A stretch of DNA of 63,716 nt, the filler included, from Octopus bimaculoides (Eukaryota), in assembly GCF_001194135.2 (NCBI RefSeq). It is 5 parts of 5 records of this genome, joined end to end, with 100 filler letters (N's around TTAATTAATTAA, not from the genome) between each part and the next. Parts side by side here need not be neighbours in the genome. Positions count along the whole stretch, not along the records: positions 1 to 28,665 come from NC_069002.1; 4 more parts are not named here. One strand, given 5' to 3'. Below, piece after piece: positions 1,628 through 28,665 of the stretch; position 1 is the first letter of the stretch; each line of letters begins with the position of its first letter. A program made the position numbers and the translations under genes. The notes under the pieces are model-generated. The model was not told the DNA's origin. It saw nothing but the letters and a program-made list of their open reading frames with translations, and did no database searches.

Positions 1628-1922
1628 GGAGGCGCAATGGCCCAGTGGTTAGGGCAGCGGACTCGCGGTCATAGGATCGCGGTTTCGATTCCCAGACCGA
1701 GCGTTGTGAGTGTTTATTGAGCGAAAACACCTAAAGTTCCACGAGGCTCCGGCAGGGGATGGTGGCGAACCCTGCTGTACTCTTCCACCACAACTTTCTC
1801 TCACTCTTACTTCCTGTTTCTGTTGTGCCTGTAATTCAAAGGGTCAGCCTTGTCACACTGTGTCACGCTGAATATCCCCGAGAATTACGTTAAGGGTACA
1901 CGTGTCTGTGGAGTGCTCAGCC
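1628..1922 (+). mobile_element. tRNA-derived SINE family A, cut by a gap
   Basis: Head GGAGGCGCAATGGCCCAGTGG (A box) and GGTTTCGATTCC (B box); body shared with copies at 6.7, 7.2, 11.8 and 19.7 kb. Confidence 0.85.
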
Positions 1923-6513: not shown

Positions 6514-7136
6514 GGAGGGAGGAAGGAAGGAAGAAAGAACTGAGCGAGGAAGTAAGGATAAAAAGAAAGAAAGGGTTGGAATAGAAAGGGAAGAACGAAG
6601 GAAGGGAGGGAGGGAGCACGGAGAAAGGAACAACGAAAGGATAGAGGGGAGGGAGACACTCCGTCGCTTACGACGTCGTGGGTTCCAGTTGATCCGATCA
6701 ACGGAACAGCCCACTCGTGAAATTAACGTGCAAGTGGCTGAGCACTCCACAGACACGTGTACCCTTAACGTAGTTCTCGGGGAGATTCAGCGTGACACAG
6801 AGTGTGACAAGGCAGACCCTTTGAATTACAGGCACAACAGAAACAGGAAGAAAGAGTGAGAGAAAGTTGTGGTGGAAGAGTACAGCAGGGTTCGCCACCA
6901 TCCCCTGCCGGAGCCTCGGGGAGCTTTTAGGTGTTTTCGCTCAATAAACTCTCACAACGCCCGGTCTGGGAATCGAAGCCGCGAGTCCGCTGCTCTAACC
7001 ACTGGGAGGGAGGAAGGAAGGAAGAAAGAACTGAGCGAGGAAGTAAGGATAAAGAGAAAGAAAAGGTTAGAATAAAAAGGAAAGAACGAAGGAAGGGAGG
7101 GAGGGAGAACGGAGAAAGGAACAACGAAAGGATAGA
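6514..7136 (+). repeat. About 132-bp GA-rich direct repeats (6514-6646 and 7005-7136) flanking a SINE
   Basis: GGAGGGAGGAAGGAAGGAAGAAAGAACTGAGCGAGGAAGTAAGGATAAA...GGAACAACGAAAGGATAGA occurs twice with several substitutions. Confidence 0.85.
6655..7006 (-). mobile_element. SINE family A, 5'-truncated
   Basis: Reverse complement of the family A body; the extreme 5' head is missing and there is a short deletion near the B box. Confidence 0.85.
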
Positions 7137-7203
7137 AGGTATAGTGGGAAGGGTGGTATCGTTTGTGGAGTAAGAGGAAAGTATAAGATTAAGAATGTAC
7201 AGT

Positions 7204-7586
7204 GGAGGCGCAATGGTCCAGTGGTTAGGGCAGCGGACTCGCGGTCATAGGATCACGGTTTCGATTCCCAGACCGGGCGTTGTGAGTGTTTATTGAGCGA
7301 AAATACCTAAAAGCCCCACGAGGCTCCGACAGGGGATGGTGGCGAACCTTGCTGTGTTCTTCCACCACAACTTTCTCTCACTCTTACTTCCTGTTTCTGT
7401 TGTGCCTGTAATTCAAAGGGGTCAGCCTTGTCACACTCTGTGTCACGCTGAATCTCCCCGAGAACTACATTAAGGGTACACGTGTCTGTGGAGTGCTCAG
7501 CCACTTGCACGTTAATCTCACGAGTGGGCTGTTCCGTTGATCGGATCGACTGGAAACCCTCGACGTCGTAAGCGACGCAGTGCCAA
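7204..7586 (+). mobile_element. SINE family A, full length
   Basis: A and B boxes and a full body ending ...GCGACGCAGTGCCAACA; imperfect flanking duplication AAGAATG(T/A)ACA. Confidence 0.88.
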
Positions 7587-8002
7587 CACACACACAAGAA
7601 TGAACAAATGTTTGTAATGATATATCAGTGTGTGTAACGCGTGGATAAACGTGTGTAGAACGTGCGTATCATGCGTGTAACACACAATATGATGTATATA
7701 AACTTGTCTTCACTTCACAGACTTTGAACAATGTTTTCTTTTGTTTTGCTTTGTTTTGTGTGTTCTTTGTGTGAGTTATTTTCGTTTTTTTAGTCCATGT
7801 TTCCAAACTCTAAAATAGCCGACCTTTTAACTGTTGTCTTTTCCTTGACTAACTAGTCAGTCGTCTGCTGCGTAGCACACGCTCAGACACACACTCATAC
7901 ATACATACATACATACATACATACATACATANNNNNNNNNNATACATACATACTTACGTACATACATACATACATACTTACGTACATACTTACGTACATA
8001 CA

Positions 8003-8394
8003 TACTCTTTTACTTGTTTCAGTCATTTGACTGCGGCCATACTGGGGCACCGCCTTTGGTCGAGCAGATCGACCCCGGGACTTTATTCTTTGTAAGCCTA
8101 GTACTTGTTCTATCGGTCTCATTTTGCCGAACCGCTAGGTTACGGGGACGTAAACACACCAGCAACGGTTGTCAAGCGAAGTTGGGGGGACAAATACAGA
8201 CACACAAACATATACACACAAACACACATACATATATATATATATACGACGGGCTTCTTTCAGTTTCCGTCTACCAAATCCACTCACAAGGCTTTGGTCG
8301 GCCCGAGGCTATAGTAGAAGACACTTGCCCAAGGTGCCACGCAGTGGAACTGAATCCGGAACCATGTGGTTAGTAAGCAAGCTACTTACCACAC
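8003..8394 (-). mobile_element. tRNA-derived SINE family B (CORE-like CTTGGGCAAG domain)
   Basis: Reverse complement of TGTGGTAAGTAGCTTGC...GGCACCTTGGGCAAGTGTCTTCTAC...; many copies in the window. Octopus CORE-SINEs (OR families) are known, but the exact family name is not verified. Confidence 0.85.
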
Positions 8395-11302: not shown

Positions 11303-11754
11303 GTGGAAATCGTGCGGGCGTTAATCTGAAAATCTTCCGTGTTTTCTACTGTAGCCCCCGGTCAACCAAAGCCTTGTGAGTGGATTTGGTTGATGGAAAC
11401 TGAAAAATGTCCATTATGTATGTATGTATGTATGTATGTATGTGTATGTGTGTGTGTGTGTGTGTTTGTTTGTCTTCCTCACCATCGCTTGACAACCGTT
11501 GCTAGTGTGTTTATCTCCCCATAGCCTAGCGCTTCAGCAAAAGGAACCGAAAGAATAAGTACTAGGCTTTAAGGTGATGCTCCAGCATGGCCGCAGTCAA
11601 ATGACTGAAACAAGTAAAAGAACACTATATGGCGTTCCTGTAGAATAACGCCGCAAATTATCTAGAGGTGCGCACACACACTGACACACGTCAAATTTTT
11701 TTTTTTTTTCAAAATTTCAAGTTCCATTTCGTAGATGTGTATCAGGATGAGCAT

Positions 11755-12068
11755 GGAGGTGCAATGGCCCAGTGGTTAGGGCAGCGGACTCGCGGTTATA
11801 GGATCGCGGTTTCGATACCCAGAGCGGGCGTTGTCAGTGTTTATTGAGCGAAAACACCTAAAAGTTCCACGAGGCTCCGGCAGGGGATGGTGGCGAACCC
11901 TGCTGTACTCTTTCACCACAACTTTCTCTCACTCTTACTTCCTGTTTCTGTTGTGCCTGTAATTCAAAGGGTCACCCTTGTCACATTGTGTCATGCTGAA
12001 TACCCCCGAGAACTACGTTAAGGGTACACGTGTCTGTGGAGTGCTCAACCACTTGCACGTTAATTTCC
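11755..12068 (+). mobile_element. SINE family A, 3'-truncated
   Basis: Same head and body as the other family A copies. Confidence 0.85.
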
Positions 12069-12661: not shown

Positions 12662-12800
12662 CCATATACTCACGCGCGCGCACACACAGAGGGAAGCAGA
12701 AAGAAAGTAAGAGAGAGGGAGGGAGTCGGTGTGTATAGCGAAGCGACTCCAATAGAGGGCGTTGCAGTCGCTGAGATGGCGGCCGCAGCAACTCACGTCG
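12660..12800. promoter_or_regulatory. CpG-rich promoter/5' region of WDR91, possibly bidirectional
   Basis: Local CpG enrichment (cacgcgcgcg, gtcggt, agcgaagcga, gggcgttgcagtcgc) next to the ATG, in an otherwise AT- and microsatellite-rich region. Confidence 0.45.
12674..12745 (-). other. Candidate non-coding first exon of a divergent transcript (5' boundary approximate)
   Basis: Consensus donor GCGC|GTGAGTA on the - strand at 12673, about 100 bp upstream of the WDR91 ATG, in a CpG-rich patch. Confidence 0.35.
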
Positions 12801-12898
12801 ACGAATTGGTAAAAGAATATCTTTTACAGAGAGGCCTCACTTCTTCTTTCCGTGCATTTGAGTTGGAACTGAAGAATGAGAAAGAGAAAGGACTTCGG
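12776..12898 (+). CDS. WDR91: WD repeat-containing protein 91, coding exon 1 (MAAAATHVDELVKEYLLQRGLTSSFRAFELELKNEKEKGLR)
   Basis: ATG at 12776 and a GTAAGC donor at 12899. The 41 aa match the WDR91 N-terminus as I recall it (human [21 protein letters not shown]...KEKGFR). Phase 0. Confidence 0.95.
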
Positions 12899-14431: not shown

Positions 14432-14831
14432 ACTCTCTCTCTTTTACTTGTTTCCGTCATTTGACTGTGGCCATGCTGGAGCACCGCCTTTAGTCGAGCA
14501 AATCGACCCCAGGACTTATTCTTTGGATGCCTAGTACTTATTCTATCGGTCTCTTTTGCCGAACCGCTGAGTTACGGGGACATAAACACACAAGCATCGG
14601 TTGTCAAGCGATGTTGGGGGGACAAACACAGACACACAAACATATATATATATATATACATATATACGACAGGCTTCTTTCAGTTTCTGTCTACCAAATC
14701 CACTCACAAGGCTTTGGTCGGCCCGAGGCTATAATAGAAGACACTTGCCCAAGGTGCCACGCAGTGGGAACGAACCCGGAACCATGTGGTTGGTAAGCAA
14801 GCTACTTACCACACAGCCACTCCTGCGCCTA
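14432..14831 (-). mobile_element. SINE family B, full length (WDR91 intron 1)
   Basis: Complete head (AGGCGCAGGAGTGGCTGTGTGG on the - strand) and tail. Confidence 0.87.
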
Positions 14832-17262: not shown

Positions 17263-17420
17263 TGGCTGTGTGGTAAGTAGCTTGCTCACCAACCACATGG
17301 TTCCGGGTTCAGTCCCACTGCGTGGCACTTTGGGAAAGTGTCTTCTTCTATAGCCTTGGGCCGACCAAAGCCTTGTGAGTGGATCTGGTAGACGGAAACT
17401 GAAAGAAACCCCCTCCTATA
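17263..17420 (+). mobile_element. SINE family B, 5' half (WDR91 intron 1)
   Basis: GGCTGTGTGGTAAGTAGC...GGTTCAGTCCCACTGCGTGGCACTTTGGGAAAG...GGAAACTGAAAG. Confidence 0.8.
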
Positions 17421-18039
17421 TATGTATATACATACTCTATATTAAAAAAAAAAATGTTTACCCATGTTGTCACGTTTTTGCTTTCTTACTTGGTCTAGGT
17501 GTACCATGGAGTAAGATGGCAGTAAGTAGTTTGTAAGAAATTTTGGTAGCTACTTGTAGCAGGTCAAACACCCACATAGAAATTCCCCTCATTCTTGTTA
17601 AGCTGTAGGGCAGCTGAAATTACTATGCATTGATCTCTAATGATAGAGAATATTTACATCTTGTTCTGGGTTCAAATCCTGTCTACATCAACTTTGTTCT
17701 TCATCCTTCCAGGGTCTATATATACAAGAGTTGGTTTCTTTATTGATTTATCAATAACTCCTCTTTTTCTACTAATTTGTGGCCTCTTGCCAATGTCAGA
17801 GGTGATTTTGTTTTTATTATTTTTTTTTTATTGATTCGTGATAATCTGTTTTGAAAATAGTATCTTTCTGCTTATGTAAGAAACATAGATAGTATGGAAG
17901 TGTGTGTATATGTATATTCTTTTATTTGTTTCAGTCAATTGACTGCAGCCATGCTGTGTATAAATGTATATGTGCATGTGTGTGTATATTCGCCATGATA
18001 GATCGCTGACCACTACATAAAAATTTTTTTTTTTTTCCT

Positions 18040-18666: not shown

Positions 18667-18931
18667 GTCGACAAATTGCTGGATCAGTTACAGCAATATA
18701 TCTCCTCGTTTGACTTGACCAGTCTTCGAGACTACTGGTCTCGCCTCAACACACGCCTCTTCTCACGCCTCGACCAGCGGTACATGGCCGGAGTGCGGAA
18801 AATGGAAGTCGGCCTCCTCAAGTTTTATCTCATATATGCAACGCAGAACAACAAGCATGACAAGATAATGGAATTCTTCGAGAAACTCACTATGGAACTT
18901 CAGAATCAACCTGAATTTCGAGAATGGTTTA
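18667..18931 (+). CDS. WDR91: WDR91 coding exon 2 (VDKLLDQLQQYISSFDLTSLRDYWSRLNTRLFSRLDQ...ELQNQPEFREWF)
   Basis: Pyrimidine tract plus TTTCAG acceptor and a GTAAGT donor; 265 nt. Closely resembles human [36 protein letters not shown]...ELQNQAEWKDWF. Confidence 0.95.
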
Positions 18932-19494: not shown

Positions 19495-19617
19495 TTTTAC
19501 CTTTCGTTCGGAATCCAGAAGAACATCCATTATTTTCAATCCATTTCACACGCCAATGGCAGGAAACCTATTTTCTATCACTTCACAATTTCCTCAGTGC
19601 TGTCTTACAAGTTATCC
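19495..19617 (+). CDS. WDR91: WDR91 coding exon 3 (ILPFVRNPEEHPLFSIHFTRQWQETYFLSLHNFLSAVLQVI-P), ending at a U12 ATATCCTT donor
   Basis: TTTTCCAG acceptor with phase 1 matching exon 2; 123 nt. Matches human [42 protein letters not shown]. Confidence 0.92.
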
Positions 19618-20820
19618 ATATCCTTTTTTTTTTGCATGCGTGTTTGAAGATTCTTGGTCATCTAACAAAATTTTTGGGCAATTTTTTATTACTTTTCTGA
19701 TTATCAAAATATTCTTCTTATAAGCCCATATGTTGGCACTCCGCGCTTATGACATCGAGGGTTCCAGTTGATCCGATCAACGGAACAGCCTGCTCGTGAA
19801 ATTAACGTGCAAGTGGTTGAGCACTCCACAGACACGTGTACCCTTTACGTAGTTCTCGGGGATATTCAGCATGACACAGTGTGACATGGCTGGCCCGTTG
19901 AATTACAGGCACAACAGAAACAGGAAGTAAGAGTGAGAGAAAGTTGTGGTGAAAGAGTACAACAGGGTTCGCCACCATCCCCTGCTGGAGCCTCGTGGAG
20001 CTTTAGGTGTTTTCGCTCAATAAACACTCATAACGCCCGGTCTGAGAATTGAAATCGTGATCCTTTGACCGCGAGTCCGCTGCCCTAACCACTGGGCCAT
20101 TGCGCCTCCACATAAGCCCATATACATACGTACATACATAATTACACCCACTACAAAAACACACACACACATATTGTTGCTATTATGCAAAATTGTCGTA
20201 AGTCCAAAATGTTGCTTTTTCAGTAAATGTTAAAAAGAGTTTCATCATTCCATCTCTTTTTACCTTAGCAACAGTTTCAGCTTAGCAACAGTTTCAGCTT
20301 ATCAATAATACTTTGTTGGGTGCATAACATCGTTGGCAAAAATGGCATTTGTGGGACGTAAACATCAAGCAATGGTAAGGGGACAAACAAAGACACACAT
20401 ATATGATGGGCTTCTTTCAGTTTCCGTCTACCAAATCCATTCACAAGGCTCTGGTCGGCCCGAGGCTATAGTAGAAGACACTTGCCCAAAGTGCCACGCA
20501 GTGGGACTGANNNNNNNNNNNNNNNNNNNNNNNNNNNNNNNNNNNNNNNNNNNNNNNNNNNNNNNNNNNNNNNNNNNNNNNNNNNNNNNNNNNNNNNNNN
20601 NNNNNNNNNNNNNNNNNNNNNNNNNNNNNNNNNNNNNNNNNNNNNNNNNNNNNNNNNNTATGGACACCGAAAAAAATGAAAGGCAAATTTGCTTTGGCAG
20701 AATTTGAACTCCGGACATTAGGAACCAAAAGTAAAGCCACCAAACAATGTTCAAATAATGATAGGATTTCAGTTAAGGATTTCATTTTGTGTGATTTTTT
20801 TTCCTTAATTCCATTTCCAC
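19618..20820 (+). other. U12-type (minor spliceosome) AT-AC intron of WDR91
   Basis: 5' end ATATCCTTT, branch site TTCCTTAAT at 20801-20809, terminal AC at 20819-20820. Splicing here rebuilds a CCC Pro codon and keeps the frame. Confidence 0.88.
19732..20111 (-). mobile_element. SINE family A, full length with a 12-bp TSD, inside the U12 intron
   Basis: ATAAGCCCATAT is present at both 19720-19731 and 20112-20123. Confidence 0.9.
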
Positions 20821-20903
20821 CCCGTCCAACACTGCTTGCTTTTGAAGAAGACACACTTCAGAAGAAGAAAATCCTACAAGAAAATGAAATGCTGAAAATG
20901 AAG
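20821..20903 (+). CDS. WDR91: WDR91 coding exon 4 (P-RPTLLAFEEDTLQKKKILQENEMLKMK)
   Basis: 83 nt after the AC acceptor, GTATTG donor. Aligns with human [28 protein letters not shown]. Confidence 0.9.
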
Positions 20904-21451
20904 GTATTGCTTCTCAGTACATCTTTTCCTTCCTTCCTTCCTTCCTTCCTTCCTTCCTTCCTTTCTTTCTTTCTCAAAGTAATTTCATTTTAGTGGGTTG
21001 TATAAGTCATTGTTATTATCATCATCATCATCATCATCATTATTTGACACCCATTGTCCATGCAGGCAAGGGTCTGACGGTTTGACTGGGCTGGCACACT
21101 GGAAGGCTGCACCAGACCCCAGTCTGATCTGGCATGGTTTTCTACGGCTGGATGCCCTTCCTAACGCTGACCACTCCGAGAGTGTAATGGGTGCTTGAGT
21201 TAATGTGAAGCTGCTGTCTGATTTGGCATGGTTTCTACAGCTGGATGCCTTTCCTAACTCCAACCACTTTACAGAGTGTGCTGGATGCTTTCGACAGAGT
21301 AATCTGAACGCTAAAGGGTTGATATAAAGTTAATTACTATACCAGATTTAGCTTGGTGCTCGTAGGGTCTTAGCTTTGTCCAGTCCACCACAGCCTTCCT
21401 TTTGCCATGATATTAACAAATGTATGTTTACTTTGCTCTTGCACTTCCCAG

Positions 21452-21576
21452 CTTCATGCCCAGATCCAAGCTGAGGCGGCCAAACACAGCAACAGTGGAG
21501 AACGGCGCCACACAGTCTCTGCTGACCATGTGCATCCTTCCGAGGAATTGATCTTTGATTTTTCCGGTCTTTCAGA
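21452..21576 (+). CDS. WDR91: WDR91 coding exon 5 (LHAQIQAEAAKHSNSGERRHTVSADHVHPSEELIFDFSGLS)
   Basis: TTCCCAG acceptor in phase 0 and a GTTAGT donor in phase 2. The start resembles human LFALQAEI and the frame is continuous with the flanking exons. Confidence 0.8.
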
Positions 21577-21746: not shown

Positions 21747-22160
21747 TTGTTAGCAACATTTGTTGGCTACTTGTTAGCAACATTTGTTGGCTACTTGTTA
21801 GCAACATTTGTTGGCTACTTGTTAGCAACATTTGTTGGCTACTTGTTAGCAACNNNNNNNNNNATTTGTTGGCTACTTGTTAGCAACATTTGTTGGCTAC
21901 TTGTTAGCAACATTTGTTGGCTACTTGTTAGCAGCATTTGTTGGCTACTTGTTAGCAACATTTGTTGGCAACTTGTTAGCAGCATTTGTTGGCTACTTGT
22001 TAGCAGCATTTGTTGGCTACTTGTTAGCAACATTTGTTGGCTACTTGTTAGCAGCATTTGTTGGCTACTTGTTAGCAGCATTTGTTGCCTACTTGTTAGC
22101 AACATTTGTTGGCTACTTGTTAGCAACATTTGTCAGCCACTTGTAAGCAATATTTGTTAA
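21747..22160. repeat. 24-bp minisatellite (TTGTTGGCTACTTGTTAGCAACAT)n, about 16-17 copies, in WDR91 intron 5
   Basis: Directly visible tandem array with AAC/AGC variants. Confidence 0.95.
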
Positions 22161-22489
22161 ACATGTTACCAAACACTCATCAAACACTTGTGTACAAGAA
22201 TTTCTTCTGGAATTTGCTAGCAACATTCGCTGATCATTTGTTGGCAACATTTGCAGATGGGCTTCTTTGAGTTTCTATCTACCAAATCTACTTACAAGGC
22301 TTTGATCAACTCAGCGCTATAGTAGAAGACACTTACTCAAAGTGCCTGACTATGGGACTGAACCGGGAACTAAGTGGTTTGGAATCAATCTTCTTACCAC
22401 ACAACCACACCTGTGCTTATATCTTGAGTAATCTGAATATCAAGGTGCTAAACAACAACAGTAGTAAAGTTCCTTCTGGAGTCATACTG

Positions 22490-26725: not shown

Positions 26726-27125
26726 ACAGGTGTGGCTGTGTGGTAAGAAGCTTACTTCCCAACCATATTTCTCCGGGTTCAGTCCCACTGCAGTGGTATT
26801 GAACCAATGTCTGTGTTAATTATATTGGCATAATAGCTCTCCCTAGACACAACAAAATTTGTTTTAACACACAAATTCACATAAAGAATTTTGGAAACCA
26901 GATATAAAAATGAAAGTAGCTTGCTTACCAACCATATGGTTCTGGGTTCAGTCCCACTGTGTGGCATCTTGGGCAAATGCCTTCTACTATAGTCTCAGGC
27001 TGACCAAAGCCTTGTGAATGGATTTAGTAGGGGAAAACTGAAAGCCCAGAGTTGATTTGTTCAACTAAAATCCCTCAAAGTGGTACTCCAGCATGGCCAC
27101 AGTCAAATGACTGGAACAAGTAAAA
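26726..27125 (+). mobile_element. Composite, decayed SINE family B copies
   Basis: Two head segments plus a tail, with many CpG-to-TpG changes. Confidence 0.65.
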
Positions 27126-28288: not shown

Positions 28289-28665
28289 TAGGCGCAGGAG
28301 TGGCTCTGTGGTAAGTAGCTTGCTTACCAGCCACATGGTTCCGGGTTCAGTCCCACTGCGTGGCACTTTGGGTAAGTGTCTTCTACTATAGCCTCGGGCC
28401 GACCAAAGCCTTGTGAGTGGACTTGGTAGACGGAAACTGAAAGAAGCCCGTCGTATATATGTATATATATATATGTGTGTTTGTGTGTCTGTGTTTGTCC
28501 CCCCACCATCGCTTGACAACCGATGCTGGTGTGTTTACGTCCCCGTAACTTAGCGGTTCGGCAAAAAGAGACCGATAGAATAAGTACTAGGCTTACAAAG
28601 AATAAGTCCTGGGGTCGATTTCCTCGACTAAAGGCGGTGCTCCAGCATGGCCGCAGTCAAATGAC
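28289..28665 (+). mobile_element. SINE family B, near-consensus, cut by a gap
   Basis: AGGCGCAGGAGTGGCTCTGTGG head and an intact body. Confidence 0.88.

What the first reader, a model, noticed from the sequence alone, without database searches (positions are those of the whole stretch)
19618..20820. U12-type AT-AC minor-spliceosome intron in octopus WDR91
Seen: exon 3 ends ...GTT ATC C|ATATCCTTTT, and 1.2 kb later TTTTCCTTAATTCCATTTCCAC|CC CGT CCA. Joining these gives V-I-P-R-P-T-L-L-A-F, colinear with human Q-C-M-P-V-P-V-I-L-N-F. Established: RTATCCTTT donors with a TTCCTTAAY branch about 10-20 nt from the 3' end define U12 introns, and AT-AC is the rarer subtype. Inference: WDR91 expression here depends on the minor spliceosome, and GT-AG-only gene predictors will mis-model this junction.
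Basis: partly seen in the sequence, partly recalled or inferred. Interest (0 to 1): 0.7.

Follow-up and report, generated by a model that had tools for sequence, protein, structure and literature searches.

The report
Conserved AT-AC minor intron in WDR91
The third intron of this WDR91-like gene is a textbook AT-AC intron of the rare, minor-spliceosome (U12) type, and it matches the minor intron already catalogued at the same spot in human and mouse WDR91, so it is real but ordinary.

Summary
Coding exon 3 ends at 19617, followed by ATATCCTTT (19618-19626). TTCCTTAAT lies at 20801-20809, and the intron ends in AC at 20819-20820, 12 nt after the branch A. Exon 4 starts at 20821. Each motif occurs only once in the window. 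Joining 19617 to 20821 gives ...LQVI-P-RPTLLAF.

Among 108 in-frame, stop-free GT-AG, GC-AG or AT-AC junctions, this one fits a profile of relatives best: 96.3 bits against 84.3 for the next and 80.3 for the best GT/GC-AG pair.

The same AT-AC intron, at the same codon position and phase, is present in a bird WDR91 locus, in mammal and fish fragments, and in about ten invertebrate contigs. The published human and mouse minor-intron lists give WDR91 the donor TGC|ATATCCTTT. Other lineages have a U12 intron of the GT-AG subtype here, an ordinary intron 7 nt upstream, or no intron.

The assembly gap (20511-20658) lies inside the intron and starts within a repeat copy. It affects only the intron's length.

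Not shown here: junction reads from this species, and that the species is an octopus.

The finding is already known in kind and of low interest.

The parts
12776..12898 (+). Coding exon 1 of the WDR91-like gene (ATG at 12776), followed by a GTAAGC donor
   Evidence: aligns to bird WDR91 exon 1
18667..18931 (+). Coding exon 2 (CTLH-like domain), with a conventional AG acceptor and GTAAGT donor
   Evidence: 77% nt identity to L001
19495..19617 (+). Coding exon 3, ending ...GTT ATC C (first base of the split Pro codon)
   Evidence: homologous exon found in 59 metagenome loci
19618..20820 (+). U12-type AT-AC intron, phase 1; the length of 1203 nt includes an estimated gap
19618..19626 (+). U12 5' splice site ATATCCTTT, a perfect match to the consensus
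   Evidence: Only match in the window. The block conserved with L001 ends exactly at 19626. Human and mouse WDR91 have the same donor
19731..20111 (.). Interspersed repeat of ~380 nt inside the intron, with four other copies in the window at 88-94% identity
20383..20510 (.). SINE-like interspersed repeat, cut short by the assembly gap
20511..20658 (.). Assembly gap (148 N), entirely intronic
20801..20809 (+). U12 branch-point sequence TTCCTTAAT; branch A at 20808 (or 20807), 12 (13) nt before the last intron base
   Evidence: Only match in the window. The block conserved with L001 starts exactly at 20801. Distance
20819..20820 (+). 3' terminal AC dinucleotide
20821..20903 (+). Coding exon 4 (CC CGT CCA ... 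ATG AAG), followed by a GTATTG donor
21452..21576 (+). Coding exon 5 (LHAQIQAEAAKH...), with a conventional AG acceptor and GTTAGT donor

Best explanation
Positions 19618-20820 are the third coding-region intron of a WDR91 orthologue on the + strand. It is a U12-dependent (minor-spliceosome) intron of the AT-AC subtype, in phase 1.

By established knowledge of this intron class, U11 snRNP and later U6atac pair with the donor /ATATCCTTT. U12 snRNA pairs with TTCCTTAAT and bulges the branch adenosine at 20808 (or 20807). The 3' cleavage then occurs after the AC, 12 nt downstream. This joins 19617 to 20821 and restores a CCC proline codon (...Q-V-I-P-R-P-T-L-L...).

The intron is orthologous to the known human and mouse WDR91 minor intron, so it is inherited at least from the common ancestor of vertebrates and the invertebrate lineages sampled here. 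The other four splice-site pairs of the gene visible in the window are ordinary GT-AG.

Shown here: the motifs, their spacing, the reading frame, conservation of position and phase across species, and the superiority of this junction over all alternatives. Inferred: actual use of the junction in this animal's mRNA, and its dependence on the minor spliceosome.
For: 1. The donor ATATCCTTT and the branch motif TTCCTTAAT are each the only match in the window. They sit exactly at the exon 3 end and 12 nt before the AC at the exon 4 start.

2. I scored all 108 in-frame, stop-free GT-AG, GC-AG and AT-AC junctions around the two exon ends against a profile built without the window or its closest relative. 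AT19618-AC20820 ranks first at 96.3 bits. The next scores 84.3 and the best GT/GC-AG pair 80.3.

3. A 14-sequence alignment across the junction has no gaps, and P42 (the split codon) and P44 are invariant. It includes four uninterrupted sequences: L042, L053, L055 and L057. Of 49 long annotated homologues, 39 are colinear at the junction.

4. The same C|ATATCCTT donor, with a TCCTTAAC-like branch motif 10-11 nt before AC and the same phase, occurs in bird WDR91 (L004), in the relative with 83-86% amino-acid identity in exons 2-4 (L001), and in L002/L047, L007, L043, L046, L048, L060, L061 and L062. Nineteen protein fragments, some deposited under mammal, bird or fish names, read through as '...M-HIL'.

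5. Nucleotide conservation with L001 covers only the exons, apart from about 60 nt of intron 2 before exon 3. At this intron it stops at the last base of ATATCCTTT and resumes at the first base of TTCCTTAA.

6. Literature. The minor-intron tables of Olthof et al. 2019 list WDR91/Wdr91 with 5'SS TGC|ATATCCTTT and branch sequence TATTCTTTAACT. The human WDR91 U12 intron is retained in RBM48 knockout cells, and the RT-PCR primers used there bracket this junction. Molluscs are relatively rich in minor introns, and Octopus sinensis was included in a pan-eukaryotic survey (PMC10639083).

7. Phase 1 fits the known bias of minor introns away from phase 0.
Against: No transcript or spliced protein from this species was found in the protein collections, so use of the junction is not directly observed.

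The presence of minor-spliceosome snRNAs in this genome could not be checked; none lie in the window.

The intron contains an assembly gap, so its length and full content are unknown.

An in-frame, stop-free GT-AG alternative exists on paper: GT19611 with AG20777, which would insert DFILCDFFSLIPFP.
Confidence: 0.93

Rival explanations
1. The intron is removed by the major (U2-type) spliceosome using a nearby GT-AG pair, for example the GT at 19611 with the AG at 20776-20777. The U12-like motifs would then be relics.
For: GT19611 with AG20777 is in frame and free of stops. In insect-like lineages a genuine GT-AG intron has its donor at the position that corresponds to 19611.
Against: That junction would replace V-I with a 14-residue insert (DFILCDFFSLIPFP) seen in no relative, and it scores 76.2 bits against 96.3. 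The AG at 20777 follows a purine-rich stretch with no pyrimidine tract. In the insect-like lineages the acceptor is also displaced, so the coding sequence stays colinear; that is not the case here. Both U12 motifs are perfect and conserved in the closest relative.
Confidence: 0.03
2. The scaffold is mis-joined at the gap, or the gap hides a further exon. Exons 3 and 4 would then not be neighbours, and the 'intron' would be an artefact of assembly.
For: There is a 148-N gap of estimated length at 20511-20658, and its left edge falls within an interspersed repeat.
Against: Exons 3, 4 and 5 are in the right order, strand and frame. Gap-free orthologous introns of 110-1681 nt in at least ten loci contain no extra exon. 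No residue is missing across the junction. Both splice signals lie in sequenced DNA, 893 nt before the gap and 143 nt after it.
Confidence: 0.02
3. The locus is a decaying or non-expressed copy of the gene, so the intron signals are present but no longer used.
For: No expression data are available for this species. The window covers only the first five coding exons.
Against: All five exons have open frames, intact splice signals and an ATG. The exons are 77% identical in nucleotides to L001 while the introns cannot be aligned, which is the pattern expected under purifying selection.
Confidence: 0.02

Closest known systems
Human and mouse WDR91 minor intron (MIDB / Olthof et al. 2019; hg38 chr7:135207203-135208790, 1588 nt)
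   Same: Same gene family and the same codon position and phase (...M/I-C|ATATCCTTT ... AC|C-). The nine-base donor is identical, the subtype is AT-AC, and the mature junction is the same x-P-x-P-x-L.
   Different: The branch motif is TTCCTTAAT here and TTCTTTAAC in human and mouse. Intron length and repeat content differ. The residues beside the junction differ (Q-V-I-P-R-P here, Q-C-M-P-V-P in vertebrates).
U12-type introns of the GT-AG subtype at the same WDR91 site (metagenome contigs with exon end ...LSTM, e.g. L028)
   Same: Same position and phase, with a U12-type donor core TATCCTT and a TCTTAAC-like branch motif 12 nt before the 3' end.
   Different: The termini are GT...AG rather than AT...AC. 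This is the subtype switch already known from other minor introns.
Conventional U2-type GT-AG intron in insect-like WDR91 genes (e.g. Timema podura P0034/P0073, L008, L041)
   Same: It interrupts the same short stretch of the coding sequence.
   Different: It lies 7 nt upstream and in phase 0 (FQ|CMP). It has a GTAAGT-like donor, a pyrimidine tract and an AG, and no U12 motifs.

Membership tests
U12-type (minor-spliceosome) intron | 5' splice site matching /RTATCCTTT | tested here: met
   ATATCCTTT at 19618-19626, 9 of 9 bases, the only match in the window
U12-type (minor-spliceosome) intron | Branch-point sequence matching TTCCTTRAY | tested here: met
   TTCCTTAAT at 20801-20809, 9 of 9 bases, the only match in the window
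U12-type (minor-spliceosome) intron | Short distance from branch point to 3' splice site (about 10-20 nt) | tested here: met
   12 nt from A20808 to C20820; orthologues have 10-12 nt
U12-type (minor-spliceosome) intron | AT-AC termini (for the subtype) | tested here: met
   AT at 19618-19619 and AC at 19819+1001 = 20819-20820
U12-type (minor-spliceosome) intron | The junction restores the reading frame and is colinear with orthologues | tested here: met
   Best of 108 candidate junctions; gap-free alignment with invariant P42 and P44
U12-type (minor-spliceosome) intron | Orthology to an intron already classed as U12-type | tested here: met
   Bird WDR91 locus L004; human and mouse entries in the Olthof et al. 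supplement
U12-type (minor-spliceosome) intron | The junction is observed in mRNA of this species | not testable with these tools
   No spliced product of this species in the protein collections; no read data on hand
U12-type (minor-spliceosome) intron | Removal depends on U11, U12, U4atac and U6atac snRNPs | not testable with these tools
   Needs an experiment. For human WDR91, retention in RBM48 knockout cells is published
WDR91 | N-terminal LisH/CTLH-like region | tested here: met
   Pfam PF23138 CTLH_Armc9, E = 3.2e-21, residues 47-168
WDR91 | Orthology to vertebrate WDR91 | tested here: met
   Exons 1-4 align to bird locus L004, whose downstream exons match solved WDR91 structures at E = 1e-76. 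The U12 intron position is shared
WDR91 | C-terminal WD40 beta-propeller | not testable with these tools
   That part of the gene lies beyond the end of the piece (28665); only exons 1-5 are in the window

The most novel reading that the evidence does not exclude
The WDR91 site may be a compact natural series for studying how minor introns change. One homologous site carries an AT-AC U12 intron, a GT-AG U12 intron, an ordinary GT-AG intron displaced by exactly 7 nt with the coding sequence left unchanged, or no intron.

The most novel reading not excluded is that the displaced intron descends from the U12 intron by a relocation that moved both ends together, rather than by loss followed by an independent gain. 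The GT at 19611 in this window would mark the latent upstream donor.
Probability: 0.25. Interest if true: 0.4.

Novelty: already known. Interest (0 to 1): 0.15.

Why it matters
For annotation, the junction 19617/20821 should be modelled as AT-AC. Predictors limited to GT-AG will produce a wrong peptide here, as seen in public models of other species (P0058, P0109).

Biologically it adds one more animal lineage to an intron that was already known to be an ancient, conserved minor intron. WDR91 output in this animal is therefore expected to be sensitive to minor-spliceosome activity, as it is in human cells. It opens no new question.

Tried and rejected
1. A protein search with the 68-aa exon 3+4 peptide found nothing. 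The 198-aa query found only fragments called on genomic DNA. No spliced product of this species was recovered, so there is no direct transcript evidence.

Exon 2 alone was used instead. It returned no identical protein but many annotated orthologues.

3. An Rfam scan of the window gave no hits, so no snRNA or other RNA gene is present. ARAGORN found no tRNA genes, so the repeats are not recognisable as tRNA-derived by that tool.

4. The introns of the window and L001 cannot be aligned, so L001 could not be used to read across the gap. The gap was assessed through repeat copies and exon colinearity instead.

5. A human WDR91 sequence recalled from memory was used only as a probe to locate exons. 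No conclusion rests on it. Its role was taken over by tool-derived sequences: bird L004, mammal P0088 and the PDB hits.

6. The organism label 'octopus' could not be tested. The annotated collections cover phages, plasmids, E. coli and prokaryote genomes only.

7. GT-AG alternatives were enumerated and rejected.

Full report
**Observation.** On the + strand...CAA GTT ATC C is followed at 19618 by ATATCCTTTT. At the other end...TTTTCCTTAATTCCATTTCCAC finishes at 20820 and is followed by CC CGT CCA. RTATCCTTT and TTCCTTAAY each occur once in the whole window on both strands. Chance would give about 0.9 matches of each somewhere in the window, so the motifs alone prove nothing. Their placement does. 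One sits exactly at the end of an exon. The other sits 12 nt before an AC that restores the reading frame. From the counts I estimate the joint chance at about 1e-9 for fixed positions, and about 1e-6 if each exon end is allowed some 60 nt of freedom.

**Gene model.** A probe search followed by reading the sequence gave five coding exons on the + strand:
- exon 1: 12776-12898, beginning with ATG
- exon 2: 18667-18931
- exon 3: 19495-19617
- exon 4: 20821-20903
- exon 5: 21452-21576

Introns 1, 2 and 4, and the donor of intron 5, are ordinary GT-AG with pyrimidine tracts. Only intron 3 is unusual. It is in phase 1, which fits the known bias of minor introns away from phase 0 (PMC10639083).

The 198-aa product of exons 1-4 matches Pfam CTLH_Armc9 at E = 3.2e-21. 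It aligns exon by exon to a locus in the bird Callipepla squamata (L004). The downstream exons of that locus match solved structures named WD repeat-containing protein 91 at E = 1e-76. The gene is therefore a WDR91 orthologue. Its WD40 part lies outside the piece.

**The gap.** The 148 N at 20511-20658 lie inside the intron, 893 nt after the donor and 143 nt before the branch motif. The left edge cuts a ~180-nt interspersed repeat that has at least ten copies in the window. Other copies run on for about 60 nt beyond the break, so this is a typical repeat-induced assembly break.

Exons 3, 4 and 5 are in the right order, strand and frame. Gap-free orthologous introns of 110 to 1681 nt contain no extra exon. 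The alignment across the junction has no gap or missing residue. The gap therefore makes the intron length (1203 nt) an estimate and changes nothing else.

**Is this the junction?** I enumerated every GT-AG, GC-AG and AT-AC pair with a donor between 19560 and 19720 and an acceptor between 20660 and 20880. Of these, 108 are in frame and free of stops. I scored them against a profile built from twelve relatives, leaving out the window and its closest relative.
- AT19618-AC20820 ranks first at 96.3 bits.
- The runner-up scores 84.3 bits.
- The best GT/GC-AG pair scores 80.3 bits.
It would insert 14 residues seen nowhere else.

**Relatives.** Protein searches returned mostly open reading frames called on genomic DNA that run on into the intron. 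This turned out to be useful: a C|ATATCCT donor reads as '...M-HIL'. Nineteen fragments show this signature, among them a rhinoceros entry and sequences of mammal, bird and fish type.

A scan of metagenome contigs with the exon 3 peptide gave 59 loci. The states at the orthologous base were as follows:
- **AT-AC U12 intron.** Fourteen loci have C|ATATCCTT (one of them A|ATATCCTT). In L001, L002/L047, L004, L007, L043, L046, L048, L060, L061 and L062 the other end was also recovered: a TCCTTAAC-like motif 10-11 nt before AC, followed by the homologous exon.
- **GT-AG-subtype U12 intron.** About 28 loci, whose exon ends ...LSTM, have C|GTATCCTT (three with one base changed). Where the 3' end is visible (L028), it is TGTCTTAAC, then 11 nt ending in AG.
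- **Shifted ordinary intron.** Ten loci have a conventional GT-AG intron 7 nt upstream, in phase 0.
- **No intron.** Six loci have no intron at the site.

A 14-sequence alignment across the junction, including four uninterrupted sequences, has no gaps, and the two prolines (P42, the split codon, and P44) are invariant. Of 49 long annotated homologues, 39 are colinear at the junction.

The closest relative, L001, has 83-86% amino-acid identity and about 77% nucleotide identity in the exons. Apart from about 60 nt of intron 2 upstream of exon 3, its nucleotide similarity to the window is confined to the exons. At this intron it stops at 19626, the last base of ATATCCTTT, and resumes at 20801, the first base of TTCCTTAA. 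This is the footprint expected if both signals are under selection.

**Literature.**
- The supplementary tables of Olthof et al. 2019 (PMC6717393) list a minor intron in human WDR91 (chr7:135207203-135208790) and mouse Wdr91, with 5' splice site TGC|ATATCCTTT and branch sequence TATTCTTTAACT. The exonic TGC is the end of ...CAG TGC ATG C, as in the bird locus.
- A study of RBM48 knockout cells shows retention of the WDR91 U12 intron and reports a maize homologue that also has a U12 intron. Its RT-PCR primers lie in the exons on either side of this junction. I placed them by comparison with the mammalian sequences, which is an inference.
- A survey of more than 3000 genomes notes relative enrichment of minor introns in molluscs and includes Octopus sinensis. 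It gives about 26% of human minor introns as AT-AC.

**Mechanism.** By established knowledge of this intron class, the donor is recognised by U11 and later U6atac. The branch sequence pairs with U12 snRNA, with the adenosine bulged. The 3' site is chosen by its short distance from the branch point. All requirements that can be read from DNA are met. Use of the junction in this animal, and its dependence on the minor spliceosome, are inferred and not shown.

The prediction that GT-AG-only predictors would mis-model the junction is supported by examples in other species. Models P0058 (...LQAM-HILFAEIS-LLNF...) and P0109 (...HTM-HILYINIKESIQS-LPVPS...) translate the start of the intron. Ten of the 49 long models deviate at this point. 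The 'octopus' label could not be tested.

**Verdict.** This is a real, well-supported AT-AC minor intron, orthologous to one already catalogued in human and mouse. It is useful for annotation and is not new. The only mildly unusual point is the variety of states at this one site across animals, in particular the ordinary intron displaced by 7 nt with the coding sequence unchanged. I recorded this but did not resolve it.

Noticed in passing
Orthologous site in L003, L008, L016, L020, L026, L032, L041, L045, L052, L054; corresponds to window 19611: In insect-like and some other lineages the WDR91 intron is a conventional GT-AG intron exactly 7 nt upstream of the U12 position, in phase 0 (FQ|CMP). 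The coding sequence is unchanged, so both ends are displaced together. A simple splice-site shift does not explain this. Whether it reflects loss plus gain or relocation is open.
   Followed up: partly
L009, L011-L015, L017-L019, L021-L025, L027-L031, L033-L038, L040, L050, L051 (donor); L028 (both ends): In one group of related contigs (exon end ...LSTM) the same intron position carries a U12-type intron of the GT-AG subtype (C|GTATCCTT). This is an AT-AC to GT-AG subtype switch at a single orthologous site.
   Followed up: partly
Proteins P0058, P0109 (also P0056, P0070, P0078, P0099, P0108): Public full-length gene models of WDR91 homologues are mis-modelled at this junction. P0058 and P0109 translate the start of the AT-AC intron ('HIL...'). 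Others delete or replace residues there.
   Followed up: partly
window 1628-1922, 6657-7006, 7202-7588, 11754-12067, 19731-20111: A ~380-nt interspersed repeat has five copies at 88-94% identity, in both orientations. One translated frame happens to resemble the WDR91 peptide HNFLS..VPVI, which gave spurious tblastn hits.
   Followed up: partly
window 8226-8353, 14658-14769, 17309-17425, 20383-20510, 22256-22361, 26948-27044, 28347-28462 and others: A SINE-like element of ~180 nt has ten or more copies. The gap at 20511 starts inside one copy. ARAGORN finds no tRNA-like gene in any of them.
   Followed up: partly
window 21747-22000: A 24-nt minisatellite (TTGTTAGCAACATTTGTTGGCTAC, about 10 copies) lies in intron 5 and is interrupted by a 10-N gap at 21854-21863. 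A (TTCC)n array at 20926-20971 lies just after exon 4.
   Followed up: no
L004 10001-10715 and 11785 onward: In the deposited annotation of the bird assembly, WDR91 is split into two gene models (116 aa and 607 aa). The break lies in the intron before the exon that precedes the U12 intron.
   Followed up: no
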